From positions 1-64,000 of IMG/VR virus record IMGVR_UViG_3300029984_000001: a DNA stretch of 64,000 nucleotides. One strand, given 5' to 3'. Below are positions 3,201 to 22,706 of this stretch, piece after piece; the stretch's first letter is position 1, and each line of letters begins with the position of its first letter. Both the position numbers and the translations under genes were made by a program. Below the pieces are notes generated by a model. That model worked only from the letters and a program-made list of their open reading frames with translations. It searched no databases and was not told the DNA's origin.

Positions 3201-6200
3201 AGATTCACCAAAAATAGAATTAGAAACAGTAGACCCAACATCACTACTATTAGATTTATATATTTTACTGTTATTCTTTAGACTATTATTATCAGAATCT
3301 TTTATAGGACTAAGTCCAGGTAAATGAGCTAATGTAGAATTATAAAATTGAGTTAAGAATCCTTTAAATCCATTTAGAATGAATCCACCTATACCAAGTA
3401 CACCTTCTTTAACAACTGCACCTATACCACTTACAACAGCAGGTATAATTGTTCCAGTAATGAATGGGACTACTTTATCTTTTAAATATGGTATTACTGT
3501 AGATTTAGCAAATCCAATTAATTGTGGAGCGAAGGCAAACCCTAACATTCCTTTCATTAATGTAGATGCTATACCAACGGTTTTTAAATCTGTAGAATTT
3601 GATATAAAATCAGCAGCTTTACCCCTAACTTTTTCAACATTTCTAGATAAAAATGTCATCATTTTATTTTTATAAACTTTATCTTGTTTATTATCTCTTT
3701 CAACTTCTTGAGTTTGTATATCACCTTTATTATAGATTTTATTATTATTACCATCTATATGATATTCCCTACCATCCTCATCTCTTTGATTCTTATTAAC
3801 ATTTCCTTTAAGATTATATTTAGAAGGCATTGATATCAGATTTGGTTTTTTATTAATTTCCTTTGTATCATATGATAATTCATTTGCATCTATCTCTTCT
3901 TTGGTTACATATTCCTTTTCACCTCTCGTATTCATATAATATAATCTATTATCAGAATCTTTCAATATTTTCTTTTTCTCTTTTGAATTATAAGAATCAA
4001 ATGCAGATAAAGCCCTATTTGAATTTGGAGATGGATGAGCTATATCATGTAATGTGGTAATAATTTCTTCCATTTTACTATTTATTTTTTCTCTAAATGT
4101 TTCACTTCTTTCTGATTCTTGTTCTTGTAATACTTCCATTCTTTCTTCTGGAGTTTTAGTTTCATTCTTTTTCTTATTTACATTAATTTCTTTATCTAAT
4201 AGATCTATATACTTCGATAATTTTTCAGGATTATTAAGTACACTATTAGGAATTTTAACACCAGATTTTTTTAATTTATCCATGAAATCCACATAAGATT
4301 CTGTTTGTTTATATCCTTTATCTACAGATGTATTATAATTATTAACTTTACTAGCAAGACTTCTTTTTAATGTTTCTTTTTCACCGTCAGACATATGTTT
4401 AGGATTAATATTATCAATCATTTTAAAGGCTATATCACTCTTGCCGTCCCTAATCAATTTCATAATCTTCTTAGATGTAAAGTATCCAACGTCTTTACTA
4501 ACATGCCCACCCATATCGTCTATCATAGATACTCTATCAGATTTATTCTTCTTATAATCTGTTCTCATATTAGAAAAACTATCTCTCATCATATTAAGTT
4601 TCTTAGAATCACCTTGAGTGAACCCGTCAATTAATTGATCAAATTCAGAGGTTTTATCTCCTAATCCCATTGCATGTTTTCTTCTAAAGTCTAATCTTTC
4701 AGAAGCAGTCATATAATCAGCAGTACCATTTTTTATTTGACGTTTTCTTAAACGATTACCAGCCATATTTATTAATCCTATAGGTGCTCCGATTAATCCC
4801 TTTAATGCCTTACTACTTATCCATGTTAATGCTTTACCTACAGGACCAGCGATTTGTGCTACTAACTTAGATAACGGTACACCTAAACTACTTTCAATTA
4901 TTTTATCAAATATTTTAAGAACACCTTTACCTAGACCTTTAGCCATTAATTCCATTTGTTTAGAGAATGGTTTTACAGATGTAGCTAATTTTTCGAACAC
5001 ATTCTTCTTAAACCACGTTACAGCTCCATCCCTTTTCTCTTTTAAAAAAGCAGACATAGGATCTACAATCTTTTCTCTAAAATGAGGTAATAGTCCACCG
5101 ATATATTTACCATGACCATCTGGTTTACCGAATATAAAGTTTTGGAATTTTTCTGATGTTGTAGCCATACCAATAGCAGAACCAAGAAAAGCATTTCCCA
5201 TAATACCAAATGGTAATGGACTTGCTATAGCAGCAACCAAAGCTCCTGCTCCAATTCTAGGCAACATTGATTTCATCTTTTCTTTCTTTTTACCTAACCA
5301 CGATTCATTATTTTTACCGAATAACCATTCTTTCATTCTACCAGTATCTTTAGCATAAGCAAAAGATGCACCTAACATAACTCCACCTATTGGACCAAAA
5401 GGCATAAATGGTAACAATCCTGCAACTCCACCCACAATTCCATAATTCTTTAAATCTGGCAATAACTTCTTCATTTTATTTACAAATTTACTACTTGTGG
5501 CTTTTGCGACGAATCCACCTTTACGTTGTTTATCCCCATTTTCATCAGTAAATTCCTCACCAAACAACCAGTTTTGCATTGTCTCAGAATGTTTAGTTAT
5601 AGATATTCCTGCTCCAATTGCAGCTCCTAATAATGGTCCACCTAACATTCCTGTGACTAAAGATACACCTGAACCTAGTAATGCTGAACCTATAGCTTCA
5701 GGAGCATAAGTTGTAATTCCTTTAGATGCTTCTGATATAAAATTAGATACTTTCTTCTTTTCTGCTAATATTTTCTCTGGAGTTAATTCTTCATTACCAT
5801 TAGTTAAACCAGAAAAGACTTTAGTAGCAGCATTCTTTAATTCACCTTTCATTTGGTCTAGATAATCTGTAAATATATTACCATCTTTAGAAGGGTTTTT
5901 TAATTCACCTAATACAGTTTTTAATATACCAGCATATTGATTATTTTTTTCTTGAGAAGAGAAAGATTCTTTTATCTTATCATGATTAATCATATTCAAC
6001 ATAGTAGACATTGTATCATTATAATCATCTGAATCTTGTTCTTTCCCTCGAAGCATATTCTTCATTTTTAAATGAGTTCTTTTTGCTATATCTTCATTAG
6101 ATACCTTATCACTATTTACATCATTAACAGAAGTCTTTATAAACTTTTTAAAGTTTCTCCATTGTTCTGCTTCTTTTACTGGAAGTACAGCCTCACCTCT

Positions 6201-9014
6201 ACTTATAACTGCTACAGTATCTTGATCTACATTATCTGTACCTGTTGCATAATGAGGAACTTCATTGTTCATATAATTATTTATAACTGTACCTATATCA
6301 CTAGAAAACGTTTCAGCAGCTCTATCTTCACCTCTATTTAATCCCGAAAATTTACCTTTTATTTTAGATGTAATTGGAGAAAATACTGTACCAAAAGCAT
6401 TTTTAGTAGAATCCCATGCTCCAGAGAATACAGATTTGATTCCTCTTCCTATTTCAGAAAATAAACCATCAACTCCATTTTCTTTACTACCAAATAAATA
6501 TTCTTTTACTTTTGCACCTAAATCTTTCAATCCAGTTCTTTCTAGAATATCATTTAGTTTATCTTTTATTCCAAGATCTTTTATTTTATCTGTTAGAGGA
6601 TCTATAACTCTTTCATCTAACCATGTAGAGAATTTATTGAAATTTTCTTTAAGTTTATCAATCATTACTGTTACAAAACTTCTATCATCAGCTTTTTCTC
6701 CAACACCGTAAATTAAACTATATAATTTATTATCTATTTTATCAAATACTCTAGACATTATTTGATTAGGTTTATCAACAATGGATTTAATTTTATCTGT
6801 CATAGTTTTAATTTTATCATAAGATGTACCCGTCTCATCTAGATCATTCATTATCTCATGTATAAAAGACGTCCTATTTTGTAATAATGAGTTTCTTCTA
6901 AACTCTTCTGTTTCCTTTACATTATAAATTTTACCAGCTACACCTCTTTGTAATTTATCAGAATCGTAATCAGTGGTATTAATAAGACCATGATTATCTT
7001 TAGCTTTTCTTTTAGTAACTTCATATGATGCTTCAGATCTTCTTCTAGTTTCTATTTCTCTTAAATCTTCAGTACTAGTTGAATTATTATCTGGAATATT
7101 ATATGTGTCTATATTTGGTGTTGTTAATGAAGTGCCTCTTCTTCTGCCAGTACTACTTGTATTATTACTTCTAATAAATCTTAACTCTCTTAATATTTGA
7201 TCCAAATACCAGAATCCACTATAACCTTTATCACTATTTACATTTAAAGGACTATTTTTATAGGTTAAAGTAGAATTTTTCTTCACATTTCCTTTTTCAT
7301 CTACTCTATAATCATCTTTACCAAATAGATTATTGTCAATAGTATTATAAACACTATTACCTTTATTCTCTATATCTGTAAGATGATTTTTCTGATCTGC
7401 TCTACTTCTCATTATATTTTGAGATAACATTTTCTTTGTATCTTGATTAGAACCTTCAAATAATCCTTTTATAATTTCATAATTATCCGAATCTTGTATA
7501 TTATAATAACTATGATCTAGATTTTTATTATTATATTCAAATAATATACCTTTATCATAAATAGTATTCAACATACTCTTCATATCTTTAAATAAAGATT
7601 CTTGTTCAGAGTAAGTTAGATTTATATACTTAGACATTTCTTTCATTTCATTTTCTATATCTCTTGTAGCTGAATCAGCATAACCTTGTTTTAGATTATC
7701 AAAATTCTTTTTGATTTGATGTTGTTCTACAAAAGTTCCTTTTTCATGATCAAATATCTGAGCAGGCATACCAGATAATAACGAAATTATTTTTGCTAAT
7801 TGTTGTGGTATTACATCATTTAAAGTTTTATCAGAAATTCCATTCCATTTCATTTCACCTCTATGGTATTTAGCAGGAGATAATGATTTTTTTAAACCAG
7901 TATCAGGAGAGAATATTTTTGTTAATTCTCTAATTTTATCAGTGAATGGATTATCTCCTCTATCTTCATCTGTAAACCCATTTAGTTTAGCTGTTAATGA
8001 TCCGAATAGAGATGACGCAGTTTTATCTATCTTCCCCATACTCTTCTTCAAACCGTTACCTATTATGAATTTACTAACAAAACCCTCCATAAGCATACCT
8101 AAAGGATTAGCTGCCAACATCTTTAATACATTTGTATCATCACCCATAGAGTTTAAAGTAGATGTAATTAGACCTAAATCTGGATTGTTCATAACGTTTT
8201 CTTTTACATGTGAAAAATATTCTTTTATATCTGGAATACCACCAATAGCAATATCAGAATAAGATTTCTTTTTCTTAGATTCTTTCTTTTCTGGACCAAT
8301 AATAGTATTCATTTTAGTAGATATTTCTCTTAATAAAGCCGTTTGATCTTGAAGTAACTTGGTAGACTCTTCATAATATTTCTTTTGATTTTCTGCCATA
8401 CTTTTTGTAATATCAACAACAGGCATCATAGAACCTATATTATCATTTATAACTCCAAGATGTTTAGAAAACATTTGATTCGATTTAGTATTTTGCACAT
8501 ATAATAAATTAGTATTTTCTTTTGATACTTGAGTAGAGTATTCTGTTGATCTAACTATTGCTGAACTTATTGCATTAGCATTTGCTTCTGATGATTGATG
8601 AATGTTACTGGATATCATATTATCATTAGAAGGACTAGGAGAATCATTAAAATCTTCATCATCAAAATTAAAATTATCTAACCCTTCAAATTCATCATCA
8701 AAATTCATTCCTGATTGTTCAGCAGATATTTGATCTATTCTTTTAGTATTATAAAAAGTACCATCTCTTAAATCTTCCATAAGAGATTTTTTTAATTGTT
8801 CACCAGCAGTATATACTTGTGATTTTTTAGTATAATCCATCATCCTTTTATATGTTTGTTTATAATTAATAATATCAGAATAGGCTGATCTGAATAAATC
8901 GGCATTAGTCTCTTTAAAATCTTTGACTGAAGACATATTTTCTGATACATGATTAACAGTAGCATATACTATAGATTTTGCAACATTAGTACTATACCCT
9001 AATAAATTAGCCAT
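282..9014 (-). CDS. Giant tail-associated/tape-measure-like protein with C-terminal glucosaminidase/lysozyme-like (approx 1638-2005), NlpC/P60 (approx 1080-1425) and M23 peptidase (approx 636-1004) domains
   Basis: GTPYLWGG..FDCSGFVQY..HVGIYIG (NlpC/P60); HTGIDIG..HYFGHM..STGPHLHYE (M23); YGVDPSLAASIMINETG..NNPAGI..IGSKYAP (glucosaminidase-like); HYATGT..GEAVLP tape-measure-type motif; GGAGG RBS. Confidence 0.85.
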   Translation of the reverse strand: MANLLGYSTNVAKSIVYATVNHVSENMSSVKDFKETNADLFRSAYSDIINYKQTYKRMMDYTKKSQVYTAGEQLKKSLMEDLRDGTFYNTKRIDQISAEQSGMNFDDEFEGLDNFNFDDEDFNDSPSPSNDNMISSNIHQSSEANANAISSAIVRSTEYSTQVSKENTNLLYVQNTKSNQMFSKHLGVINDNIGSMMPVVDITKSMAENQKKYYEESTKLLQDQTALLREISTKMNTIIGPEKKESKKKKSYSDIAIGGIPDIKEYFSHVKENVMNNPDLGLITSTLNSMGDDTNVLKMLAANPLGMLMEGFVSKFIIGNGLKKSMGKIDKTASSLFGSLTAKLNGFTDEDRGDNPFTDKIRELTKIFSPDTGLKKSLSPAKYHRGEMKWNGISDKTLNDVIPQQLAKIISLLSGMPAQIFDHEKGTFVEQHQIKKNFDNLKQGYADSATRDIENEMKEMSKYINLTYSEQESLFKDMKSMLNTIYDKGILFEYNNKNLDHSYYNIQDSDNYEIIKGLFEGSNQDTKKMLSQNIMRSRADQKNHLTDIENKGNSVYNTIDNNLFGKDDYRVDEKGNVKKNSTLTYKNSPLNVNSDKGYSGFWYLDQILRELRFIRSNNTSSTGRRRGTSLTTPNIDTYNIPDNNSTSTEDLREIETRRRSEASYEVTKRKAKDNHGLINTTDYDSDKLQRGVAGKIYNVKETEEFRRNSLLQNRTSFIHEIMNDLDETGTSYDKIKTMTDKIKSIVDKPNQIMSRVFDKIDNKLYSLIYGVGEKADDRSFVTVMIDKLKENFNKFSTWLDERVIDPLTDKIKDLGIKDKLNDILERTGLKDLGAKVKEYLFGSKENGVDGLFSEIGRGIKSVFSGAWDSTKNAFGTVFSPITSKIKGKFSGLNRGEDRAAETFSSDIGTVINNYMNNEVPHYATGTDNVDQDTVAVISRGEAVLPVKEAEQWRNFKKFIKTSVNDVNSDKVSNEDIAKRTHLKMKNMLRGKEQDSDDYNDTMSTMLNMINHDKIKESFSSQEKNNQYAGILKTVLGELKNPSKDGNIFTDYLDQMKGELKNAATKVFSGLTNGNEELTPEKILAEKKKVSNFISEASKGITTYAPEAIGSALLGSGVSLVTGMLGGPLLGAAIGAGISITKHSETMQNWLFGEEFTDENGDKQRKGGFVAKATSSKFVNKMKKLLPDLKNYGIVGGVAGLLPFMPFGPIGGVMLGASFAYAKDTGRMKEWLFGKNNESWLGKKKEKMKSMLPRIGAGALVAAIASPLPFGIMGNAFLGSAIGMATTSEKFQNFIFGKPDGHGKYIGGLLPHFREKIVDPMSAFLKEKRDGAVTWFKKNVFEKLATSVKPFSKQMELMAKGLGKGVLKIFDKIIESSLGVPLSKLVAQIAGPVGKALTWISSKALKGLIGAPIGLINMAGNRLRKRQIKNGTADYMTASERLDFRRKHAMGLGDKTSEFDQLIDGFTQGDSKKLNMMRDSFSNMRTDYKKNKSDRVSMIDDMGGHVSKDVGYFTSKKIMKLIRDGKSDIAFKMIDNINPKHMSDGEKETLKRSLASKVNNYNTSVDKGYKQTESYVDFMDKLKKSGVKIPNSVLNNPEKLSKYIDLLDKEINVNKKKNETKTPEERMEVLQEQESERSETFREKINSKMEEIITTLHDIAHPSPNSNRALSAFDSYNSKEKKKILKDSDNRLYYMNTRGEKEYVTKEEIDANELSYDTKEINKKPNLISMPSKYNLKGNVNKNQRDEDGREYHIDGNNNKIYNKGDIQTQEVERDNKQDKVYKNKMMTFLSRNVEKVRGKAADFISNSTDLKTVGIASTLMKGMLGFAFAPQLIGFAKSTVIPYLKDKVVPFITGTIIPAVVSGIGAVVKEGVLGIGGFILNGFKGFLTQFYNSTLAHLPGLSPIKDSDNNSLKNNSKIYKSNSSDVGSTVSNSIFGESHTDSITGEKYNEIGNGTKAISRYILTGGATGTKALKGFGWLANKSSRIIGKGFDLGKNMLHPLKTIMGTNTASKLGNITRGAGSLVEKSTNFIAKSGGIMNSVYKGIGMDKALSGAMESIKKFLFNLVSNPEIEALVGTERTVKIVEKFIPKFLSGLTQKIAANITKVSARLAGLSTGGVLNIALAIVDFVMGYSNAQTILGITEEPTFLEKVGCGLMKALTGLTIILSFLPDSFLIDLIFDTLLPIFGIDNTDLQQQREKARQEYEDYKKKNNVDISMEDYINKNKGKGKYIVNSMTDTKIDKYQDYINKQDQPTSQNVNPFNKVETVSPGVIDYQNINKNKVIATDSQSSNNNNNNSVSAKYTGNLPWQNVGGANESKKLFNGVGGESTSDGVNAILRGKLSGMGQTYIDLGKKYGVDPSLAASIMINETGGNSPALNNDNNPAGIMDWNNNWKTIKHFDSLNEGLDFAIKNLGDNYIKKGLTTIDQIGSKYAPIGAANDPNGQNKDWVPTVTSLYKKATGDTTPNNPAATGISSSTNSSSSSSNGIAGFFSDLSGAIGNSMNNIFGFNKDANSSSIGNSSSGTTVSGKPGEVIKIAQSFLGTPYLWGGTTPNGFDCSGFVQYVFNKMGIDVGRTTYDQKNAGFHVDQKDIQAGDIVLFKGSSSPPSHVGIYIGDDKYIHAPKTGDVVKISDLSSRNDIYDIRRVLTGSSVGGAVYKGVGGAIENFFSNSLKGNVTSGFGLRDTTGSIPKNHTGIDIGAAKGTSIKSPISGTVVQNKSTKDSNGLGNLLVVKDAIGGEHYFGHMNESSNLKPGDSIKEGQGIGNIGSTGNSTGPHLHYETRQNGVPVNPDTYMRRTFEINNNGIGGENEDNSNITKTQSQSSLKDNPEIGKFLQSVITILTNICVNTTPISDMVKLLSDNGNDNKQTSSNNDIQSKKQNILNKIQKATQSNQDISLSEIMKDMENLALGN

Positions 9015-9887: not shown

Positions 9888-12800
9888 ATGATATTTATAG
9901 ACGAAATAAAATCTCTTAAGTTGTATAATAAACCTTTTTATCTTCCTATTAATCTAAAAGATAAGAAGAGAGGAAGTTCTGTATTTCTTTTAGGTAGAAA
10001 TACCTATCCAGATGGTAGTGGTTATGCTGCTGCTGATATATTATCATCTAATCCATTACTTAATAAAAAATATTTCGAATCTTATTATATAGAAAAAGAT
10101 GTTACTTTCTATATAAATAATGAAGGTTATGTAATGGTTGATAAAATGTCGAAAGTGTTAAATGAAGATAGTTTAGATAAGTTATCAACTGTATTTGGTA
10201 CTGCATCATCATTAAGTATGAGACATTACAAGAATAATGGGACAGATGATGATCCTAATATCGACAAAGACGATAAAGGACAACCAAAATTAAAAGAAGG
10301 CGAAATAAATCCAGATGACACTAAAGACAACAAATTAAAAGCGGATGTATCTAAATCCGAGGACGCTGAACCAACAAATCCAAATAGTACAGATAGTAGT
10401 AATGATAATATAGATACAAATGAAGATGATAAATCTAAATTAAAACAAGATTCAAGAATAAATATATGGGATGAATTAGATAAGGTAGAAGAAAAAGGTG
10501 GAAATAAACATGAATTAATATTTGAATTAACATTCAAAGATTATGATAATAATTATGAATCTCCACGTTCTAGAAATAGTTTATCTAAATATTCTTCTAT
10601 TAAAATACATGATAGTTCCCAATTTAAACATGTTAGAATAGGTAAGAATTATAACGGAAAAGCTTTTTATGATGGAGATGCTTTAGTGGGATATGTAAAT
10701 GTAAATAAAGATAATAATACTATTCAGGCTATGGAAGTGTCTAAAGAGTATCAAGGAACTGGTTTAGGTTCTCAAATATTAAATTTTGCTATAAAAAACC
10801 TCAATGCGACGAATCTTACTGTAAATAAAAAGAATAAAGTTGCTATTAATATGTACAAAAAAAGTGGTTTTGAAAGTTATGATGAGACTGAATATATGTG
10901 GTTTATGAAATTAAATAATAGTAAAGTTGTAAAAGAACAAGTTATGAATGAGTTTTCTAGTTATGAAATGATAAGTGATTTTATGGGTATGATTAAACAA
11001 GCTAAAATAGATGCTTATAATAAAGAATGTCAAGAAAGAGCTTTACAAAATAGATTGATGTTAGAAAATGGAGTTATATCTGAAGGTAATTTTGAGCAAG
11101 AATTAGTTCCAGACGAATTTATAGGTAAAATAGAAGACTCTCTTACTGGTGGTTTCATAGAGTTTGTAAAAGAAGATTGTTCTGTTGTGTTGGGAATTAA
11201 GAGTGAGTTAGAATATATGAATGAAAATATAAATTCTAGTTATAAAAATAAAATTCATAATCTATTATATAATGATAGATTTAAAACTCCTAAAGAAGTT
11301 TTAAATCAGTATGATACTGTAAAAGAAAAAAATTCTGATATAAAATATACTTATTTAAATTATGATAAATATGTTGGAAAAAACTTGTTTATAGATTTAT
11401 CTTTTTATAATGACTCTTTCTATAAAAATAATTCACTTACAAATGACAAAGCTGTAGATTTCTATATTGATTTTATAAAAAGATTAATATTAGATAAAAG
11501 ATTAGATGGTATTTATAATAAGAGAACTATACTTATACCGTTAGACCATGTTATAGAAGATAAGAGAGATTTAATTTATACTCAAAGTATAAATATATTA
11601 TCTTGTATTATAAGAATGATTAATGATAAACATCCTGATGGTTTATGGGATTTTAAAGGTATAGAATTTTTATTATTATCCAATAATGGATATATGAAAT
11701 TTGAACCTGATAAATTGACTAAAGAAGATATTCCTAAATTTGAAAGTCTATTAATAAAATTTGTCAATAAAGAACCGATAGTTGATGATAGTAACATAAA
11801 AGATTCACCGCAAGCTATAGTCGCTAATATATCGGATAAAATTGAAACTTCACAAGGTATTAAGATACATAATCTTACAGGACAAAGTGGAGATAAGAAT
11901 ATAGATGATATAATTAATAAAGTATCAGATGTAGCATCTAAATCTATGTCAGAGGATGAAACTCTGGATAAATTAAATGATAATGATACAGATGATTTCA
12001 AGAATTTAGTTTTAAAAGCAGCTGTAACAAATGGTGAGGTAAAAATCAATGCAAGTAGACAAGCTAGATTAAATAAAGTACATGAAGAATTTATGAATGT
12101 AAAGATAAAGAATAAAACAGTAAAAGAATTATTATCTAAAGAAGATGAGAATAAGGAGTTACCCACTTTATCTTTAAATAATAAAATAGATACAGTAAAT
12201 GAGGAGTGGAATGATTTAAAATTTGTGAATTTCAATACTGTGTATGATATAAATAAAGATATAGTAGATATTCTAAATTCATTATCTACTAAGAAAAATC
12301 CTATTATGGTTAGGGATATACAAATAGAAGATACATCAACTTCTGAAGATATGGTGGAGACATGGACTGTTAAAATGGAAGATGCACATGGTCAAAGATT
12401 TAGTTTCGTATTTGAATTACCTAAATTTAAAGATAAAAGTTCATTATTTCTAAGAGGTAATAAGAAAAAGATCTCTGGACAATATGTATTAATCCCTATA
12501 TCTAAAACAGATGTTTATACAGCTCAAATTGTATCTAATTATAAAAAGATATTTATTAGAAGATTTGGATTGTCTGCTCCAGGAAAATCTTATCCAACTG
12601 CTGATTTGATTTATAAAACTTTATCTAAAAACGAATTTAAAGGATTAAAAATAACTCCAGGAGATAATACTAAAATATCTAATAAGTATGATCTTCCAAT
12701 GGATTATATAGATTTAGCTACTATATATTCTACAATAGAAACACCTAATACTATTATATATTTTAATCAAGATGAAATTAATAAAAAATATAAAGATAAA

Positions 12801-15116
12801 ATAGATAATAATAAAGGTTTACCATTTGCTGTAAATAAATCTAATAATAATATTATATATTGGAATGATAATGTTGTATTATCTGATATGATTTCTACTC
12901 AAATAAGTGTAGATATAAAAGATTATAAAGAATCTTTTGATTTACAAAAAACTAGTACTAAATACCATTATTCACAAGCAAGTATACTAGCATCAAAAAT
13001 TCCATTAATTGTTGTATTAGGTTACAATGAGGGTTTAACAAAAGTATTAGATAAATCAAAGATAGTATATAATATGCAAGAAAAAAGACCTTCTATAAAT
13101 AATACATTTGAAGATTACATAAAGTTTAAAGATGGATATATCGTCTATACCTTAACTTATGATTCTTCATTATTAATGAATGGGTTGAAAGAATGTAATA
13201 CAGAGGACTATTCTTTAACTGAAATAGATAATCCTACGATGTTTTTAGATTTCTTAGATATTTATGGAGGTAGAATATTAGCCGATGGTCTGGATAACTT
13301 TTATGAGTTAATGATAGATGGGATAACAGAAGATGTATTAGAAAGATATAATTTACCGACAGATTATGTTACACTTTGCTTACTAGCAAATAAATTGTTA
13401 GTGGATAATAAGTATATAGCTCATACTAATCCTGAAAGTAATCGTTATAGAAGTAATGAATTACTAGCTGGTTATGCGTATCAATGTATAGCTACGTCTT
13501 ATGGTGATTATAAGACATTTATTAAAAAGGGTAAGACTAAACCTATGACTATGAAGAGAACAGCTATTATAGATGCTATATTATTAGACTCAACTTGTGG
13601 GGATAAATCTGTATTAAATGAAATAATGGATTGGGAAGATGAATGTGCTTTATCTCATAAAGGTCTATCTGGTATGAACAATGATAGATCATATTCTTTA
13701 GATAAGAGAACTTATAATAAAAATATGATTAATCTTGTAGCTATGTCTACTGGATTTGCTGGTAATGTTGGAGTTAATCGTTCTTGTACAATAGATTCTA
13801 ATGTTCAAGGGAAAAGGGGATATCTTAAAATAGATCATAATGAGGATCAGTATTCTATTACCAAGACATTTTGTCCTACAGAAGCATTGACTCCTTATGG
13901 AACTACTTCTGATGATCCTTTTAGATCAGCTATGACATTTATACAAACAGGTTCTCATAGTATGAGAGTTAAAAAAGGTATGCCTAATTTAGTTACTAAT
14001 GGAGCAGACCAAGCGATGCCTTACTTTACATCAAACACATTCTCTTATAATTGTAAAGCTGATGGTGAGGTTGCAGAATTAACAGATTCATATATGGTGT
14101 TGAGATATAAAGATGGTACTCATGAATTTATAAGTTTAGAAGAAAAGGTAGAAAAGAACTCTAATGGTGGTATTTATATTACTATTAAATTAGACCCTTG
14201 TGTTAAACAAGGTCAAAAAATAAAAGCTAAAGATATAGTTGCTTATGATAAATTATCATACTCTAATAAAGTTGGGGATGGACGTAATCCTGCCTACTCT
14301 GGTTATGTAATATGTAAAATGGCTGTAATGAATACTGAGGAAGGTTATGAAGATAGTACAGTCATTTCTGATTGGTTATCAGATGCAATGGCTTCTGATG
14401 TTGTAATAAAGAAAGAAGTTATAATACCTAAAGATTCTAATATTCTTTCTATGGTAAAGAAAGGTCAACCTATTAAAGAAGGAGATTCTTTAATGGTATT
14501 CCAAAATGCATATGATCAAGAGGATGTAAATATATTATTAAAGAATTTATCCGATGATGAGGATGGTATTTCTGAATTAGGAAGAATTCCAATTAAATCT
14601 CATGTTGAAGGAATTGTACAAGATATAAAGATTTCTAGAACAGTAGAAATAGATCAATTATCTGAATCATTACAAAAAATAGTTAAAGCGTATGAAAAAC
14701 CAATTAGAGATAAAAAACAAATATTAAGTAAATATGATATTCCTAATAATGGTTTATTAGATGCCGATTATAAATTAGATAGTACTGGTAAATTGAAGAA
14801 TGTAGATGAAGGTTTATTAATAGAAATATTCTGTAAGTATGAAGATAAGCTATCTACAGGTGATAAGCAGGTGGCATACTCAGCATTAAAAGGAGTAGTT
14901 AAAGGAATGTATCCAAAAGGGATGGAACCTTTCAGTGAATTTAGACCTGATGAGAAAATACATACAATTACCGCTGTGGAAGGAATTTTAGCTCGTATGA
15001 TTGGCAGCCTTGAAAAAGTAGGTAGTATAAATAAAGGTTTAATAGAATTGGATAGATTGGTTAAAGACAAACTAGGAATTAAATGGAAATATCTAGAAGA
15101 GATGATGGAAAACTAA
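9888..15116 (+). CDS. rpoB: Split multisubunit RNA polymerase beta subunit (likely virion RNAP) with a long N-terminal extension containing a GNAT domain
   Basis: FELPKF..LRGNKKKISGQ; ALTPYGTTSDDPFRSAMTFIQ (cf. [20 protein letters not shown]); VMNTEEGYEDS (cf. GYNFEDS); GDK..LKGVV (cf. GDK..NKGVI). Ends before the bacterial beta C-terminal clamp segment, as in phiKZ/AR9-type split RNAPs. Confidence 0.92.
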   Translation: MIFIDEIKSLKLYNKPFYLPINLKDKKRGSSVFLLGRNTYPDGSGYAAADILSSNPLLNKKYFESYYIEKDVTFYINNEGYVMVDKMSKVLNEDSLDKLSTVFGTASSLSMRHYKNNGTDDDPNIDKDDKGQPKLKEGEINPDDTKDNKLKADVSKSEDAEPTNPNSTDSSNDNIDTNEDDKSKLKQDSRINIWDELDKVEEKGGNKHELIFELTFKDYDNNYESPRSRNSLSKYSSIKIHDSSQFKHVRIGKNYNGKAFYDGDALVGYVNVNKDNNTIQAMEVSKEYQGTGLGSQILNFAIKNLNATNLTVNKKNKVAINMYKKSGFESYDETEYMWFMKLNNSKVVKEQVMNEFSSYEMISDFMGMIKQAKIDAYNKECQERALQNRLMLENGVISEGNFEQELVPDEFIGKIEDSLTGGFIEFVKEDCSVVLGIKSELEYMNENINSSYKNKIHNLLYNDRFKTPKEVLNQYDTVKEKNSDIKYTYLNYDKYVGKNLFIDLSFYNDSFYKNNSLTNDKAVDFYIDFIKRLILDKRLDGIYNKRTILIPLDHVIEDKRDLIYTQSINILSCIIRMINDKHPDGLWDFKGIEFLLLSNNGYMKFEPDKLTKEDIPKFESLLIKFVNKEPIVDDSNIKDSPQAIVANISDKIETSQGIKIHNLTGQSGDKNIDDIINKVSDVASKSMSEDETLDKLNDNDTDDFKNLVLKAAVTNGEVKINASRQARLNKVHEEFMNVKIKNKTVKELLSKEDENKELPTLSLNNKIDTVNEEWNDLKFVNFNTVYDINKDIVDILNSLSTKKNPIMVRDIQIEDTSTSEDMVETWTVKMEDAHGQRFSFVFELPKFKDKSSLFLRGNKKKISGQYVLIPISKTDVYTAQIVSNYKKIFIRRFGLSAPGKSYPTADLIYKTLSKNEFKGLKITPGDNTKISNKYDLPMDYIDLATIYSTIETPNTIIYFNQDEINKKYKDKIDNNKGLPFAVNKSNNNIIYWNDNVVLSDMISTQISVDIKDYKESFDLQKTSTKYHYSQASILASKIPLIVVLGYNEGLTKVLDKSKIVYNMQEKRPSINNTFEDYIKFKDGYIVYTLTYDSSLLMNGLKECNTEDYSLTEIDNPTMFLDFLDIYGGRILADGLDNFYELMIDGITEDVLERYNLPTDYVTLCLLANKLLVDNKYIAHTNPESNRYRSNELLAGYAYQCIATSYGDYKTFIKKGKTKPMTMKRTAIIDAILLDSTCGDKSVLNEIMDWEDECALSHKGLSGMNNDRSYSLDKRTYNKNMINLVAMSTGFAGNVGVNRSCTIDSNVQGKRGYLKIDHNEDQYSITKTFCPTEALTPYGTTSDDPFRSAMTFIQTGSHSMRVKKGMPNLVTNGADQAMPYFTSNTFSYNCKADGEVAELTDSYMVLRYKDGTHEFISLEEKVEKNSNGGIYITIKLDPCVKQGQKIKAKDIVAYDKLSYSNKVGDGRNPAYSGYVICKMAVMNTEEGYEDSTVISDWLSDAMASDVVIKKEVIIPKDSNILSMVKKGQPIKEGDSLMVFQNAYDQEDVNILLKNLSDDEDGISELGRIPIKSHVEGIVQDIKISRTVEIDQLSESLQKIVKAYEKPIRDKKQILSKYDIPNNGLLDADYKLDSTGKLKNVDEGLLIEIFCKYEDKLSTGDKQVAYSALKGVVKGMYPKGMEPFSEFRPDEKIHTITAVEGILARMIGSLEKVGSINKGLIELDRLVKDKLGIKWKYLEEMMEN

Positions 15117-15233: not shown

Positions 15234-15464
15234 ATGAACATATTTCAAGTAACAGCTCCATATGATCAATATACAATAATAATAACAGAAGATATGATAA
15301 AAGTTTTAGAACAAGAGGTATTAGATGAATTAGGTGAAACATCTATGATAACTGTTTGGTTAGATGGTAAGGTATTAGAAAAAATTAAAATAGAAAATGA
15401 TGTAGTTTCTTATGATGAAATTTATCTTAAAATAATAAAATATGAGAATAAGAAAGGAGAATGA
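15234..15464 (+). CDS. Hypothetical protein
   Basis: AAGGAGG RBS, 76 aa. Confidence 0.7.
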   Translation: MNIFQVTAPYDQYTIIITEDMIKVLEQEVLDELGETSMITVWLDGKVLEKIKIENDVVSYDEIYLKIIKYENKKGE

Positions 15465-18944: not shown

Positions 18945-19487
18945 ATGAGTAAAAATTTATGTATATTCTGTGTAAATCAAAAAGAATGTAAATCTTGTAA
19001 AGATGAAGATAAACTTATTCCTAATGATAATATTATTAGTTATTTTAAAATGAGCCATGATTATGTAGATGGAACAGTAGTATATGAATATTATTACGAT
19101 TCTTTGAATAGTAATTTAAAATCCACTAAGTCTGTAATTATGAATGATACTGAGAGATGTCCATATTGTGGTAACATTAAACTTACTATTCAATCTAAAG
19201 AAGATATATACACAACAATAGGATCTTGTTGTTTATGTGAAGGAGCTATCAATGAAATAAAATATAATGAAGATTTGAAGAAGTTGAATGATGAATATAA
19301 TAATAATAAAAATGATTTATTAAATAAATACAAAGACTTATTAAAGTATGATTTACAAACGTTATTTGAGATTAAACAAAGAGTTGAATTAAAAAGATTT
19401 AATTTCTTCAATAAAGATTCAACTTATAATACTTTGAATACATTCGGAGGAAAAGATTCAATGAAAATAGAAGATATATTATTTTAA
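18945..19487 (+). CDS. Cys-rich putative zinc-binding protein
   Basis: CIFC..CKSC, CPYC, CCLC motifs; GAGGGG RBS. Confidence 0.6.
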   Translation: MSKNLCIFCVNQKECKSCKDEDKLIPNDNIISYFKMSHDYVDGTVVYEYYYDSLNSNLKSTKSVIMNDTERCPYCGNIKLTIQSKEDIYTTIGSCCLCEGAINEIKYNEDLKKLNDEYNNNKNDLLNKYKDLLKYDLQTLFEIKQRVELKRFNFFNKDSTYNTLNTFGGKDSMKIEDILF

Positions 19488-19490
19488 CTT

Positions 19491-19513
19491 AATAGGGGAG
19501 TTGTTCCCCTATT
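19491..19513 (+). terminator. Intrinsic terminator
   Basis: AATAGGGGA/TCCCCTATT stem followed by ATTTTTT. Confidence 0.75.
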
Positions 19514-19567
19514 ATTTTTTATATTACATAGACATAAACTTTGTATTAGGGAGAGGAGGGATTTAAT

Positions 19568-20085
19568 ATGTTAATAAATAGAGTTTGGAATATGCCATCT
19601 AAAAATACTTTTGAAATTCTACCTATAAAACAATTAATTTCAAAATATATAATTGGTAAAGAGGTGGTTATAGATCCTTTTGCTAATAAAAATACTATAG
19701 CAAATATAACAAACGATCTAGATCCTCAATATGATACTATATTTAATAAAGATGCTGTAGATTTCTTAAAAATAATACCATCAGATTCAGTTGATATGGT
19801 ACTATACGATCCACCTTATTCATCTAGGCAAGTGTCTGAATCTTACAAGAAATTAGGAATGAGTGTAGATAAAACTACAACTCAATCTAGTTATTGGAGT
19901 GAGCAGAAAAAAGAGATAGCAAGAGTTACAACAAAAGGTGCTATAGTTATTTCTTTTGGTTGGAATAGTTGTGGTGTGGGAAAGGTCAGAGGTTTTGAAA
20001 TTATAGAAATATTAATGGTCAGTCATGGTGTCATGGTGGGAATCATTATGATACAATATGTACAGTAGAACAAAAAATAATATAA
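19568..20085 (+). pseudogene. Compact DNA adenine methyltransferase, frameshifted near its C-terminus by an 8-bp tandem duplication
   Basis: IDPFAN and DPPY motifs; TCATGGTG duplicated at 20023-20038; removing one copy restores [18 protein letters not shown] (stop 20083-20085), like the family C-terminus HGG.HNDTI.TVE. Confidence 0.85.
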
Positions 20086-20102
20086 GAAATGAGGAATTAA
20101 AA

Positions 20103-20894
20103 ATGAAATCATATGAAGAACAATATTTAGAACTATCAGAAAACATTTTAAAAGATGGATATTATGATAATAATAGAACTGGGGTCTCTACATATAAATT
20201 ACCACATCAAATTATACAAGTTAATTTAGAAAATGAATTTCCTATATTAACATCTAAATTCGTTGCATTTAAAACTGCTGTTAAAGAGCTTCTATGGATT
20301 TTTAAAGATCAATCTAATATAGTACAAGAACTAAAAGATCAAAATGTTAATATATGGAATGAGTGGGAAATGGAAGATGGTACTATAGGAGAAAGTTATG
20401 GATGGATTGTTAAGAAATATAATCAAATAGATACACTTATAGATGCTTTAAAAAATAATCCACAAGATAGAAGAATGATGATAAATTTATGGCAAATACC
20501 ACACTTAGATAAAGGTGCTCTATATCCATGCTGTTTCCAAACCTTATGGGATGTTACTGATGGAAGATTAAACTGTATGCTAATACAACGTAGTGCAGAT
20601 ACACCATTAGGTTTACCATTTAACACAACTCAATATGCTGTACTTGTACATATGTTAGCTCAAGTAACAGGTCTAAAAGTTGGATTGTTTACTCACGTAA
20701 TAAATAATGCTCACATTTATGAAAATCAAATAGATGGAATGAATGAGCAATTATCTAGAAAGAATGATTTATATAATAGTCCTACATTTTGGATAAATCC
20801 AGAAATAAAAGATTTTTATGATTTTACATCAGACGATGTAAAACTTATAGATTATAAACATCATAGTGCAATAAAAATGCCAGTATCAGTATAA
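20103..20894 (+). CDS. thyA: Thymidylate synthase ThyA
   Basis: GAGGA RBS before ATG 20103; NRTGV, ELLWIF, LYPCCF (catalytic Cys), QRSAD..LGLPFN, HIYENQ. Confidence 0.97.
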
Positions 20895-20912
20895 AGAAAG
20901 AGGTGTAAAATT

Positions 20913-21368
20913 TTGATAAGAATTGTAGAGGATTCTATATTCAATGCAAAGGAAAATATAATTTGCCATCAAGTAAATACGCAAGCAAAAATGGGTAGTG
21001 GGTTGGCATTAGAAATGAAAGATAGGTATCCAGTGGTGTATAATGATTATATGAGACTATGTGAAAAGCATTATAAAGAGAATAAACCATTATTAGGTAT
21101 ATGTCAATTAGTATCTGTTAATAATACTAAATTTGTAGCTAATTTATTTGGTTAAGATTTTTATGGTAATGATAAAAAATATACTAATTATAATGCATTA
21201 ATAAGAGGTTTTACAAGATTATTTCTAAATGCTAATTGTGATATAGCAATACCTTATCTAATTGGATGTGATAATGGTGGAGGAGATTGGAAGAAGCTAT
21301 ATAATATAATTGAAATATTAGCAGAGGATTTTCCATATAATGTAGTAATATATAAATACCATCCATAA
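20913..21368 (+). pseudogene. Macro domain (Poa1p/DarG-like ADP-ribose hydrolase) with an internal TAA at 21153-21155
   Basis: ICHQVN...MGSGLA; reading through TAA (expected Gln in ANLFGQ) continues in frame DFYGNDKKYTNY..IAIPYLIGCDNGGGDW to stop 21366-21368, 151 codons. Confidence 0.88.
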
Positions 21369-21372
21369 ATAC

Positions 21373-21398
21373 AATATAAGGGATTAATCCCTTATATT
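21373..21398. terminator. 26-bp perfect palindrome, probable terminator of the MTase-thyA-macro operon
   Basis: AATATAAGGGATTAATCCCTTATATT. Confidence 0.65.
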
Positions 21399-21567
21399 TC
21401 ATAAACTGGTTAAATATAATAAAAAATAATTACGTAATTCACATTAATTTAAAAGAAATAAATCCATAATTAGATTCGTAATTATAAATAAGAACTAATA
21501 ATCGTAGATAACTGATAAGAACAGACAAGAAGGGAGTATCAATATAAAATGTAAATGGGGTATATAA

Positions 21568-21981
21568 ATGAATAAAAATGATTTATTAAAATCCATATCA
21601 GAACAAAACAGAATATTACATAAAGTATCAGAAAACAATACTCATGAAATAAAATCTACAAGTAGATTAAAAACATTATCACTTACATTAAAAGTAGAAG
21701 AAACAAGATTACCTAAACCTAATGGAGTAATGCCTATAATAAAAACATTACAAAATATATCAGAAGAACTATATATAAGTACTAAAGAATTAGTAAATAA
21801 GGATAGATATAATCTAAGAAGAGTAACTAAAGAAATACAAGATTACTCATTAGAGATGGTAGAATTAATACAATCTTATAATAATTACATAAGATTTATC
21901 ATGGATAATGATATGAAGATTGAAAAAACAATAGATGAATTTACAGAAGAAGATATAAAAGAATGGTCTAAACCCAAATAA
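21568..21981 (+). CDS. Hypothetical helical protein
   Basis: 137-aa ORF with GGGG RBS and a downstream hairpin. Confidence 0.6.
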   Translation: MNKNDLLKSISEQNRILHKVSENNTHEIKSTSRLKTLSLTLKVEETRLPKPNGVMPIIKTLQNISEELYISTKELVNKDRYNLRRVTKEIQDYSLEMVELIQSYNNYIRFIMDNDMKIEKTIDEFTEEDIKEWSKPK

Positions 21982-22032
21982 CTATATAAAGGAGTATTTA
22001 ACTCCTTTATATTTTATATCAAATTTATTTAT

Positions 22033-22045
22033 AATTGTATATTAT
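22033..22045 (+). promoter_or_regulatory. Early-type promoter motif
   Basis: AATTGTATATTAT upstream of the 22104 operon. Confidence 0.6.
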
Positions 22046-22103
22046 AGTATTGTAAACAGTATATTGTATATAAATAAATTATAATGAAGAGGAGACGATT
22101 AAA

Positions 22104-22706
22104 ATGACAGTAATTTTAGGAGTAGTAGACAAGAGAAGCAAAACGGTACATATCATGGGTGATTCAATGGTTAGTAGAGGCGAAAGTATTGCATATGAAA
22201 TTAATAAAATTTGGACTTCTAATGATTTTGTAATTGGAAGTGCTGGTTCATTAACTATGATACAATCATTAAAAAGACAATTACATTTTCCATCACAAAA
22301 AGATATTGAAGATAATAATTTGACTATTGATATTGATTTTATGGTAAATCAATTATGTCCAGCAATCAAACAATTAGTCAAAAATAATAATTTATCTGAA
22401 AATGATTTAGCTGATATTCTAGTAGGATATAAAGAAGACTTATATTACATAACATCATATTTTAACGTAATAAAAATAAGAGAGTATCAATCTATAGGTT
22501 CTGGTTGTACAAGAGCAGAAGCAGCATTTCAAAATTCAAATATACAAGATATAGAAAAAGCATTATTCCATTCAATATTATATGCTACAAAAAATATAAG
22601 ATCTTGTAGTATGCCTGCTTATTGCATAAACACTAAAGATAAACAATTTAAGAAATACGATTCAAATGGACATTGGACATTAAGTAAGGTTGATGAACAA
22701 TGGTAG
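22104..22706 (+). CDS. Proteasome-beta/HslV-like Ntn threonine protease
   Basis: M-T-V-I start (Thr1 after Met removal), GDS, NKI, IGSAGS, SIGSG motifs. Confidence 0.75.
   Translation: MTVILGVVDKRSKTVHIMGDSMVSRGESIAYEINKIWTSNDFVIGSAGSLTMIQSLKRQLHFPSQKDIEDNNLTIDIDFMVNQLCPAIKQLVKNNNLSENDLADILVGYKEDLYYITSYFNVIKIREYQSIGSGCTRAEAAFQNSNIQDIEKALFHSILYATKNIRSCSMPAYCINTKDKQFKKYDSNGHWTLSKVDEQW

What the first reader, a model, noticed from the sequence alone, without database searches (positions are those of the whole stretch)
19537..21398. Self-contained MTase-thyA-macrodomain operon: a possible thymine-DNA module
Seen: one promoter-like site (AACT-N6-TA, 19537), three genes and a palindromic terminator. 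Known: AR9/PBS1 carry uracil DNA; adenine MTases protect from restriction; DarG-type macrodomains remove ADP-ribose that DarT adds to thymidine in ssDNA. Inference: the cassette couples dTMP synthesis with two protections that matter once the genome contains thymine. It may record a U-DNA/T-DNA switch in this lineage. Both protective genes are now broken and thyA is intact.
Basis: inference. Interest (0 to 1): 0.75.

Follow-up and report, generated by a model that had tools for sequence, protein, structure and literature searches.

The report
Host-derived thyA between two dead genes
A giant peat-soil phage carries a working thymidylate synthase gene copied from a Clostridium-like bacterium, wedged between a frameshifted DNA methylase gene and a macrodomain gene cut by a stop codon; the three are a chance mosaic rather than a conserved module, though the phage's gene set suggests it builds thymine DNA while its nearest known relatives build uracil DNA.

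Summary
At 19537-21398 there is a late-type promoter-like site, three co-oriented genes with no internal hairpins, and flanking hairpins. The MTase carries an 8-bp tandem duplication. The macrodomain gene has a CAA>TAA nonsense codon at its key Gln. thyA is intact and under purifying selection. Both lesions recur in 17-24 public contigs.

In favour: the 263.6-kb phage has AR9-type RNA polymerases and both AR9 promoter consensuses. It encodes ThyA and thymidylate kinase. It lacks the dCTP deaminase, dTMPase and dTTPase of dU-DNA phages. Seven dU-type relatives show the opposite pattern for ThyA and the deaminase.

Against:
- thyA is nested among Clostridium chromosomal ThyA (71-80% identity), so it looks like an ordinary host-derived metabolic gene.
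- Close relatives carry thyA+macro, MTase+macro, thyA alone or MTase alone at this locus.
- None of 80 other macro loci has thyA or this MTase within 10 kb.
- The macro family also occurs in dU-DNA phage PBS1.
- Two RNAP trees place this lineage as sister to the dU clade, not inside it, so no U-to-T switch is needed.

Verdict: a mosaic accessory hot spot, not a thymine-DNA module.

The parts
19490..19514 (+). Terminator hairpin with a T-run that ends the upstream gene (18945-19487) and isolates the cassette
   Evidence: Terminator scan (5 found against 0.4 expected) and fold of -14.1 kcal/mol, z -3.6
19537..19548 (+). Promoter-like site AACTTTGTATTA. It is a one-base variant (AACT) of the phage's late-class motif AACA-N6-TA, which matches the AR9 nvRNAP late consensus
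   Evidence: positional enrichment genome-wide; AR9 consensus from PMC5312081. No transcript data.
19568..20068 (+). Frameshifted small DNA methyltransferase gene (phrog_11619, DPPY motif). The product is 166 aa with a wrong C-terminal 12 residues.
   Evidence: All homologues stop aligning at residue 154.
20023..20038 (+). The lesion: an 8-bp tandem duplication (TCATGGTG twice), absent from the intact alleles in L061 and L058
   Evidence: DNA alignment A2; L061 translation is intact
20038..20085 (+). Orphaned +1-frame remnant encoding the conserved MTase C-terminus ([15 protein letters not shown], then stop)
   Evidence: One search compared with homologue C-termini
20103..20894 (+). Intact thymidylate synthase ThyA, 263 aa, of Clostridium chromosomal type
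   Evidence: PF00303 E 8e-90; NCBIfam equivalog 349 bits, cut-off 327; catalytic motifs aligned to B. subtilis ThyA 1BKO; tree; dN/dS 0.11-0.14
20913..21369 (+). Macrodomain pseudogene (SCO6735/BT1257-type, ALC1-like class), 151 codons
   Evidence: phrog_335 E 6.5e-33; AF2 pLDDT 94.9; Foldseek top hits DarG, TARG1, Poa1p; profile against PDB
21153..21155 (+). In-frame TAA at codon 81, replacing the nearly invariant Gln that corresponds to SCO6735 Gln85 / DarG Lys80
   Evidence: CAA in L061; contigs of runs X2 and X9; truncated product on 17+24 contigs; no tRNA genes
21373..21398 (+). Perfect palindromic hairpin closing the cassette; the T-tail on the + strand is weak
   Evidence: Fold -13.4 kcal/mol, z -3.6; the scan flags it on the - strand only

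Best explanation
The stretch is a mosaic accessory-gene hot spot in the early-gene region of a roughly 264-kb, 26% GC jumbo phage from peat. The host is probably a Clostridium.

Only one of the three genes works. thyA is a bona fide thymidylate synthase captured from a Clostridium-type chromosome. It converts dUMP to dTMP during infection, and a phage thymidylate kinase encoded elsewhere (134862-135464) takes dTMP onward.

thyA sits between two recently inactivated genes. One is a small DPPY-motif DNA methyltransferase, killed by an 8-bp tandem duplication. The other is an SCO6735-type macrodomain, killed by a C-to-T nonsense mutation at its essential Gln. The intact relatives of this macrodomain most likely remove ADP-ribose from DNA or protein as a counter-defence.

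The three genes came together by recombination among co-occurring related phages, not by co-selection. In this arrangement they are probably read as one transcript, from an AR9-late-type promoter to a hairpin.

Shown: gene identities, lesions, mosaic distribution, origin of thyA, and the gene content of relatives.
Inferred: co-transcription, enzyme activities, the host, and that the virion DNA contains thymine.
For: Identity of thyA:
- PF00303 over its full length and above the NCBIfam equivalog cut-off.
- Catalytic PC, RS-D, PFN and H-Y motifs and the C-terminal tail align with B. subtilis ThyA.
- dN/dS is 0.11-0.14 among three phage copies.

Origin of thyA:
- The nearest proteins are Clostridium chromosomal ThyA at 71-80% identity.
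- G000, L057 and L043 form a clade (support 100/97) nested inside a Clostridium/Clostridiales clade (100/98).
- The ThyA of the nearest full-genome relative, G004, is only 41% identical, sits at a different locus, and branches with phage phi3T ThyP3.

Lesions. They are fixed in the population.

The lesions are recent:
- MTase dN/dS against the intact L061 allele is 0.013.
- Macro dN/dS is 0.116.

Mosaic locus:
- L043: thyA, its own terminator, an early promoter, a 68-aa gene, an intact macro; no MTase.
- L061, from the same metagenome as L018, the 100%-identical second record of this phage: intact MTase directly followed by an intact macro; no thyA.
- L057: thyA followed by a Band_7 gene.
- L058: MTase followed by a 96-aa gene.
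- The 15-41 kb region of the window has almost no counterpart in G004.
- None of 80 IMG/VR macro loci has thyA or this MTase within 10 kb.

Macro class. SCO6735 biochemistry is from PMC9411070.

Thymine context:
- ThyA is present only in G000 among nine genomes.
- Dcd is present in 7 of 9 genomes but not in G000.
- Tmk is present in G000.
- No Ham1-type Dtt and no PBS1 Dtm homologue.
Against: - No transcript data: the promoter, terminator and operon are all in silico. The promoter motif is short, and its fourth base departs from the AACA consensus.
- The raw-contig check did not cover the MTase duplication. Support for that lesion comes from assemblies only.
- 'Host-derived' rests on similarity and tree topology. 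The direction of transfer (bacterium to phage) is inferred from many chromosomal copies against few phage copies.
- The base composition of the virion DNA was not measured. A dU pathway built from unknown enzymes cannot be excluded.
- thyA and macro are adjacent in two related phages (G000 and L043). Some linkage by descent therefore exists, and a functional link between those two genes is not strictly excluded.
Confidence: 0.7

Rival explanations
1. One reading: the three genes form a co-adapted 'thymine-DNA module' (dTMP supply plus two protections needed once DNA contains thymine), and the module records a switch from uracil DNA to thymine DNA in this lineage.
For: - The relatives are dU-DNA phages (PMC12697855).
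- G000 alone has ThyA and lacks Dcd.
- An SCO6735-type macro can remove thymidine-linked ADP-ribose (PMC9411070).
- thyA and macro are adjacent in G000 and L043.
Against: - Every gene combination occurs at this locus in close relatives.
- 0 of 80 macro loci show synteny with thyA or this MTase.
- The macro family is also present in dU-DNA phages PBS1 and Goe21.
- In L043, thyA and macro are separate transcription units.
- thyA is of recent Clostridium type, and the G004 thyA has a different origin and locus.
- Two RNAP trees put the lineage outside the Dcd+ clade.
- Both 'protective' genes are dead while the phage is abundant in more than 20 peat samples.
Confidence: 0.1
2. The phage still packages dU-DNA, as its relatives do. 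On this reading thyA is a neutral or otherwise-used passenger, for example a recent capture not yet purged.
For: - It shares both promoter consensuses with AR9, including the late motif that in AR9 requires template-strand dU (PMC9209446).
- The gp226 homologue is retained.
- G004 keeps Val at the V206 position.
- None of the genomes has a dUTPase.
Against: - No Dcd, Dtm or Dtt.
- ThyA plus Tmk are present.
- thyA is under purifying selection in three phage lineages.
- G004/G005 independently carry a different thyA.
- In G000, gp226 V206 is Ala and Y210 is Asn.
Confidence: 0.13
3. The two 'breaks' are not loss of function. They could be sequencing or assembly artefacts, or regulated events (a reversible duplication acting as a phase switch, or stop-codon read-through).
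For: An 8-bp tandem duplication could in principle revert by slippage. The contig check did not cover that site.
Against: - Identical lesions appear in 17-24 contigs from JGI, ENA and Logan assemblies and in a second IMG/VR record.
- The TAA is present in contigs of runs X2 and X9 with no differences.
- The genome has no tRNA genes, so no suppressor.
- TAA is the main stop codon: 139 of 192 long ORFs.
Confidence: 0.05

Closest known systems
Phage-borne thymidylate synthases as auxiliary metabolic genes (e.g. Bacillus phage phi3T ThyP3; B. subtilis ThyA, PDB 1BKO)
   Same: Full-length ThyA fold and catalytic motifs. 42% identity to phi3T ThyP3. The best solved match is B. subtilis ThyA. A single gene that in relative L043 has its own promoter and terminator.
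   Different: It is of Clostridium chromosomal type (71-80% identity), not the phage ThyP3 type found in its relative G004. Here it lacks its own terminator and is embedded between two pseudogenes.
SCO6735 / BT1257-type macrodomains of the ALC1-like class (relatives: DarG, TARG1, Poa1p)
   Same: The best profile matches are BT1257 (E 6e-21), M. tuberculosis DarG macro (3e-18) and SCO6735 (6e-17). Foldseek gives TM 0.82 to DarG macro. The family conserves equivalents of SCO6735 His24, Asn27 and Gln85.
   Different: It is a stand-alone 151-aa protein with no DarT partner and no DarG C-terminal domain. The family has Gln where DarG and TARG1 have the catalytic Lys. In this copy that codon is a stop, so the gene is dead.
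dU-DNA jumbo phages AR9/PBS1, S6, phiR1-37, LPJP1
   Same: Split virion and non-virion RNAPs and a gp226 homologue. The early motif TATATATTAT-N6-G and the late motif AACA-N6-TA. 54 shared proteins with PBS1.
   Different: It has ThyA and Tmk. It lacks Dcd, Dtm and Dtt. It is sister to that clade, not a member. gp226 position 206 is Ala rather than the Val conserved in dU phages.
Small orphan phage DNA methyltransferases (phrog_11619; annotated 'adenine-specific DNA methylase' in Staphylococcus phage LSA2311 and Serratia phage BF)
   Same: 52-62% identity over residues 1-154, the same ~170-aa size, and the DPPY motif.
   Different: It is frameshifted before the conserved HGGNHNDT...VE.K C-terminus. 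The base specificity of the family is annotation only: Pfam, NCBIfam and PDB matches are all below cut-off.

Membership tests
Thymidylate synthase ThyA (EC 2.1.1.45) | Full-length match to the family model above the curated cut-off | tested here: met
   PF00303 at 301 bits over positions 1-266 of 266; NCBIfam NF002495 equivalog at 349 bits against a cut-off of 327
Thymidylate synthase ThyA (EC 2.1.1.45) | Catalytic Cys in the P-C motif, the Arg/Ser/Asp of QRSxD, the dUMP-specifying Asn in PFN, His/Tyr, and the conserved C-terminal tail | tested here: met
   Alignment to B. subtilis ThyA 1BKO shows YPC, QRSAD, LPFN and AHIY; the protein ends IKMPVSV
Thymidylate synthase ThyA (EC 2.1.1.45) | dUMP to dTMP activity | not testable with these tools
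   Needs complementation of a thyA mutant or an enzyme assay
DarG antitoxin (DNA ADP-ribosyl glycohydrolase) | Macrodomain fold of the ALC1-like class | tested here: met
   Foldseek top hits 5M3I and 5M3E, TM 0.82, E 1e-10
DarG antitoxin (DNA ADP-ribosyl glycohydrolase) | Catalytic Lys (Lys80) | tested here: not met
   The profile alignment puts the family's Gln opposite the DarG Lys. In the window this codon is TAA.
DarG antitoxin (DNA ADP-ribosyl glycohydrolase) | C-terminal DarT-binding domain and an adjacent darT gene; model cut-off | tested here: not met
   Only 151 aa. NCBIfam antitoxin_DarG scores 42.9 bits against a cut-off of 250, matching only the first 147 of 338 positions. The neighbouring genes are thyA and an unknown gene.
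SCO6735/BT1257-type macrodomain hydrolase | Equivalents of Gln85, Asn27 and His24 (Gln85 and Asn27 shown necessary for removal of dT-ADP-ribose, PMC9411070) | tested here: inconclusive
   In the family, H19 and Q81 are at least 90% conserved and N22 is invariant, and all three align to SCO6735. This copy keeps H19 and N22 but has a stop at Q81, so it belongs to the family by descent yet is non-functional.
SCO6735/BT1257-type macrodomain hydrolase | Hydrolysis of thymidine-linked ADP-ribose on ssDNA | not testable with these tools
   Would need an assay of an intact homologue, such as the L061 or L043 protein
dU-DNA phage (thymidine fully replaced by deoxyuridine) | Phage dCTP deaminase (Dcd, PF00383) | tested here: not met
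   Absent from G000 and G004/G005; present in AR9, PBS1, BpSp, S6, SA1, phiR1-37 and LPJP1
dU-DNA phage (thymidine fully replaced by deoxyuridine) | A dT-nucleotide-destroying enzyme (PBS1 Dtm or phiR1-37 Dtt) | tested here: not met
   No tblastn hit to PBS1 Dtm at E up to 10. No PF01725 match, while the phiR1-37 control is positive. The PF06941 model missed even PBS1, so that search says nothing.
dU-DNA phage (thymidine fully replaced by deoxyuridine) | Absence of thymidylate synthase and kinase | tested here: not met
   ThyA is present and Tmk is present; both are absent from PBS1 and phiR1-37
dU-DNA phage (thymidine fully replaced by deoxyuridine) | Uracil in virion DNA | not testable with these tools
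   Needs nucleoside LC-MS or UDG/restriction tests
AR9-type two-RNAP transcription system | Split multisubunit RNAP genes, a gp226-like specificity subunit, and the early and late promoter consensuses | tested here: met
   hhalign probability 98.4% to gp226; motifs compared with PMC5312081
AR9-type two-RNAP transcription system | gp226 Val206, which excludes thymine at template position -10 | tested here: inconclusive
   Ala in G000, Val in G004, Val in all six dU-type homologues. Only V206G was tested in the literature (PMC9209446).
Operon (single transcription unit) | One promoter, no internal terminators, one terminator, short spacers | tested here: inconclusive
   The in-silico features fit. 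There are no RNA data, and the tail of the downstream hairpin is weak.
N6-adenine DNA methyltransferase | Motif IV (D/N)PP(Y/F) with an AdoMet-binding motif, and a match above family cut-offs | tested here: inconclusive
   DPPY is present. Pfam matches score 16-17 bits, below cut-offs of 22-27. NCBIfam and PDB matches are weak. The phrog_11619 match is strong. Adenine specificity has not been demonstrated.

The most novel reading that the evidence does not exclude
This phage and its relatives G004/G005 form an undescribed thymine-DNA sister lineage of the dU-DNA jumbo phages. They keep AR9's early and late promoter consensuses. If their DNA contains thymine, their non-virion RNAP must read AACA-N6-TA promoters with thymine in the template strand, which AR9's enzyme cannot do. 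Consistent with this, gp226 residue 206 is Ala in G000. The two lineages acquired different thyA genes at different loci. That would make them a natural system for dating and dissecting the origin of uracil-dependent promoter recognition.
Probability: 0.5. Interest if true: 0.65.

Novelty: new member of a known kind. Interest (0 to 1): 0.42.

Why it matters
The cassette itself is ordinary: a host-derived nucleotide-metabolism gene next to two decaying accessory genes in a recombination hot spot. It matters mainly as a caution that adjacency in one genome does not make a module.

The surrounding genome is of more interest. It appears to be a thymine-using sister of the uracil-DNA jumbo phages and shares their transcription signals. 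That gives a concrete comparison for two questions: when dU-DNA arose, and when the dU-dependent promoter recognition of the AR9 non-virion RNA polymerase arose.

The macrodomain family (about 150 aa, conserved Gln) is widespread in large phages. It is a plausible but untested anti-DarT or anti-ADP-ribosylation counter-defence.

Tried and rejected
- Megablast of the region against GenBank phages: no match.
- Pfam on the two macro fragments separately: nothing. Read through with X at the stop, the Macro match was only marginal (E 0.017).
- Rfam over 19000-22200: no RNA family.
- Sigma-70-type promoter scan: at chance level, 29 found against 31 expected.
- tRNA or suppressor search: none in the genome. 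Recoding was therefore rejected and no alternative genetic code was used.
- PF06941 search for Dtm: uninformative, because it failed on PBS1 itself. It was replaced by tblastn with the PBS1 Dtm, located through the primer-encoded termini given in PMC12697855.
- Read laying: Logan contigs left holes over the MTase duplication, so that lesion could not be checked at that level.
- DnaB helicase tree: unresolved, so no information on clade order.
- gp226 V206 as a U/T discriminator: inconclusive (Ala in G000, Val in G004).
- Trimeric dUTPase, ThyX and class I RNR: absent from G000, and not discriminating.
- No complex prediction was run, because no binding claim is made.
Full report
**What the window is.** The window is the first 64 kb of a 263,571-bp IMG/VR virus record that is rated complete. 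GC content is 25.8% and there are no tRNA genes. The record encodes split phage-type multisubunit RNA polymerase subunits. By one RNAP subunit, its nearest GenBank phages (about 30% identity) are:
- Staphylococcus jumbo phages S6 and SA1
- Yersinia phiR1-37
- Bacillus AR9, PBS1 and BpSp
- Listeria LPJP1
- more distantly, Fusobacterium JD-Fnp phages

More than 20 peat metagenome runs hold the sequence.

Upstream regions genome-wide show two motif classes. One is TATATATTAT-N6-G-like. The other is AACA-N6-TA. They match the published AR9 early and late promoter consensuses (PMC5312081).

**Checking the observation.** The site AACTTTGTATTA is at 19537-19548.
- As a bare pattern it is not enriched in the window: 51 matches against 69.8 expected.
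- Its placement is non-random. Of 101 AACAT-N5-TA sites, 40 are intergenic, where 8.5% would be expected, and 33 lie 15-60 nt upstream of a same-strand start. Of 77 AACTT-N5-TA sites, 20 are intergenic and 14 are so positioned.
- The site lies between a strong terminator hairpin (19490-19514, -14.1 kcal/mol, followed by a T-run) and the RBS and ATG of the first gene.
- The two internal spacers have no structure. A perfect palindrome (21373-21398, -13.4 kcal/mol) follows the third gene.

The described anatomy is therefore real. Co-transcription remains an inference.

**The methyltransferase.** The ORF at 19568-20068 matches phrog_11619 (E 1.5e-38) and about 2,600 homologues of roughly 170 aa. 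All of them stop aligning at residue 154.
- Homologues end ...[16 protein letters not shown]. That ending reappears in the +1 frame at 20038-20085.
- A DNA alignment with two relatives shows exactly 8 extra bases, a tandem copy of TCATGGTG at 20023-20038.
- The L061 allele is 98% identical in protein and intact.
- The exact frameshifted product is on 19 public contigs.
- dN/dS against L061 is 0.013, so the break is recent.
- Family assignment beyond 'DPPY-motif DNA amino-methyltransferase' is weak. Adenine specificity is annotation only.

**thyA.** The gene at 20103-20894 is a full-length ThyA. It scores above the NCBIfam equivalog cut-off and has all the catalytic motifs.
- Its closest relatives are Clostridium chromosomal enzymes of identical length, at 71-80% identity (C. 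saccharobutylicum, C. beijerinckii, C. cavendishii and others).
- In a maximum-likelihood tree, the window's ThyA and two phage-contig copies (L043, L057) form a clade with 100/97 support. That clade is nested in a Clostridium/Clostridiales clade with 100/98 support.
- Among the three phage copies dN/dS is 0.11-0.14.

This is the signature of a host-derived auxiliary metabolic gene that is kept in working order.

**The macrodomain.** Read with X at the stop, 20913-21369 encodes a 151-aa macrodomain (phrog_335, E 6.5e-33).
- The model is confident (pLDDT 94.9).
- By fold, the best solved matches are DarG macrodomains, TARG1 and Poa1p (TM about 0.8).
- By sequence profile, the best matches are BT1257, M. 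tuberculosis DarG and SCO6735.
- The stop replaces a Gln conserved in at least 90% of 59 homologues. The codon is CAA in L061.
- That Gln aligns with the catalytic Lys of DarG and with Gln85 of SCO6735.
- SCO6735 has been shown to cleave thymidine-linked ADP-ribose from DNA, and Q85A abolishes that activity (PMC9411070).

The family is thus a reasonable candidate DNA de-ADP-ribosylase. It is not DarG: it has no catalytic Lys, no C-terminal domain and no darT gene, and it scores 42.9 bits against a cut-off of 250. This copy is dead. The truncated product is called on 17+24 contigs. The TAA is present in contigs of independent peat runs. dN/dS of 0.116 against L061 indicates a recent loss.

**Is it a module?** No.

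A closer relative, L043 (12.7 kb, about 70-78% nucleotide identity), keeps the flanking genes in order. Its layout is:
- thyA with its own terminator
- an early-type promoter
- a 68-aa Cys-rich gene
- an intact macro
- no MTase

L061 comes from the same metagenome as the second, 100%-identical record of this phage. It has the intact MTase directly followed by an intact macro, with no thyA. L057 has thyA followed by a Band_7 gene. L058 has the MTase followed by an unrelated 96-aa gene.

The nearest full-genome relatives are G004/G005 (248 kb). G004 shares 103 proteins with this phage at a median identity of 37%, and the shared genes are collinear.
- G004 lacks almost the whole 15-41 kb region of the window.
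- It lacks both the MTase and the macro.
- Both carry a different, ThyP3-like thyA at another junction.

Further evidence against linkage:
- Among the 80 best IMG/VR macro loci (1.57 Mb including flanks), none has thyA or this MTase within 10 kb.
- In GenBank Bacillus phages that have both macro and thyA, the two lie 38-124 kb apart.
- Macro homologues occur in the dU-DNA phages PBS1 and Goe21.

**Thymine or uracil?** The published dU-DNA toolkit consists of a dCTP deaminase (Dcd) plus either a dTMP phosphatase (Dtm) or a dTTP pyrophosphatase (Dtt) (PMC12697855).
- Dcd is found in AR9, PBS1, BpSp, S6, SA1, phiR1-37 and LPJP1. It is not found in this phage, in G004/G005 or in JD-Fnp6.
- ThyA is found only in this phage among the nine genomes.
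- ThyX and trimeric dUTPase are found in none.
- This phage also has a thymidylate kinase at 134862-135464.
- It has no Ham1-type Dtt, while the phiR1-37 control is positive. It has no homologue of PBS1 Dtm.

This gene content argues for thymine DNA. Only chemistry can settle the point.

**Was there a switch?** Two independent RNAP-subunit trees were rooted with phiKZ-like phage EL (plus Phobos in the first tree).
- Both place (G000, G004) as sister to a monophyletic Dcd+ clade.
- Support for the Dcd+ clade is 84/83 and 92/97. Support for the joint clade is 92/95 and 96/95.
- JD-Fnp6 falls outside.
- A helicase tree was unresolved.

One gain of dU-DNA on the sister branch explains the distribution. 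A U-to-T reversion in this lineage would need an extra step and has no positive evidence.

**A side result.** The phage has a gp226 homologue (hhalign probability 98.4%). AR9 gp226 Val206 sterically excludes thymine at template position -10, and a V206G substitution relaxes this (PMC9209446). At that position:
- all six dU-type homologues have Val
- this phage has Ala
- G004 has Val

This is suggestive but inconclusive.

**Conclusion.** The 'thymine-DNA module / U-to-T switch' reading is not. What is there is a recombination hot spot holding one functional, Clostridium-derived thyA between two freshly broken accessory genes. It sits in a phage whose overall gene content points to thymine DNA and whose lineage is sister to the uracil-DNA jumbo phages.

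Noticed in passing
window 21436-21555 and genome 139650-139769: A 120-bp intergenic repeat, 96.7% identical between the two copies. It contains CAGACA-17 nt-TAAAAT and lies just upstream of gene 21568-21981. It is also conserved (82%) in relative L061, and a similar AGACAAG...TAAAAT motif occurs twice in L043. Its function is unknown; it could be a third promoter class or a regulatory site.
   Followed up: partly
whole genome; examples in the window at 15234, 22104, 25878, 40699 (early-like) and 9040, 9854, 41809 (late-like): Two upstream motif classes match the AR9 early (TATATATTAT-N6-G) and late (AACA-N6-TA) promoter consensuses, even though protein identity to AR9 is only about 29%.
   Followed up: partly
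genome 134862-135464 (outside the window): A thymidylate kinase gene (PF02223, E 7e-40). It is absent from PBS1 and phiR1-37 and was not detected in G004.
   Followed up: partly
genome 213978-215510 (outside the window): A homologue of the AR9 gp226 promoter-specificity subunit. It has Ala at the Val206 position and Asn at the Tyr210 position.
   Followed up: partly
window 9888-15116: A 1742-aa RNAP beta-like protein. Its N-terminal part (residues ~240-337) matches acetyltransferase PHROGs, which is an unusual fusion.
   Followed up: no
window 282-9014 (- strand): A giant 2910-aa ORF preceded by a late-type AACA-N6-TA site. Only 27% identical to its G004 counterpart.
   Followed up: no
window 59673-60464 and genome 64518-65303, 102902-523; also genome 66107, 119594, 167379, 209335: Two multi-copy gene families are scattered through the genome. 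A homologue of the second family sits directly upstream of the 61%-identical thyA in an unrelated 229-kb IMG/VR virus (L019). This suggests mobile, possibly homing-endonuclease-like, genes travelling with thyA.
   Followed up: no
window 18945-19487: A Cys-rich 180-aa protein just upstream of the cassette, conserved in L043 (41%). It has only a weak match to Lar-like restriction-alleviation proteins (phrog_599, E 0.003).
   Followed up: no
Listeria phage LPJP1 record, 5336-5764 (L016): The Dcd (dCMP deaminase-family) match in LPJP1 contains two in-frame TAA stops, so the gene may be split or broken in that record.
   Followed up: no
peat run X9, contigs over window 19562-19881: Short contigs 90-91% identical to the MTase gene co-occur in the same sample, indicating several related MTase alleles or strains.
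   Followed up: no
whole genome: No tRNA genes were detected in a 264-kb jumbo phage (aragorn).
   Followed up: yes
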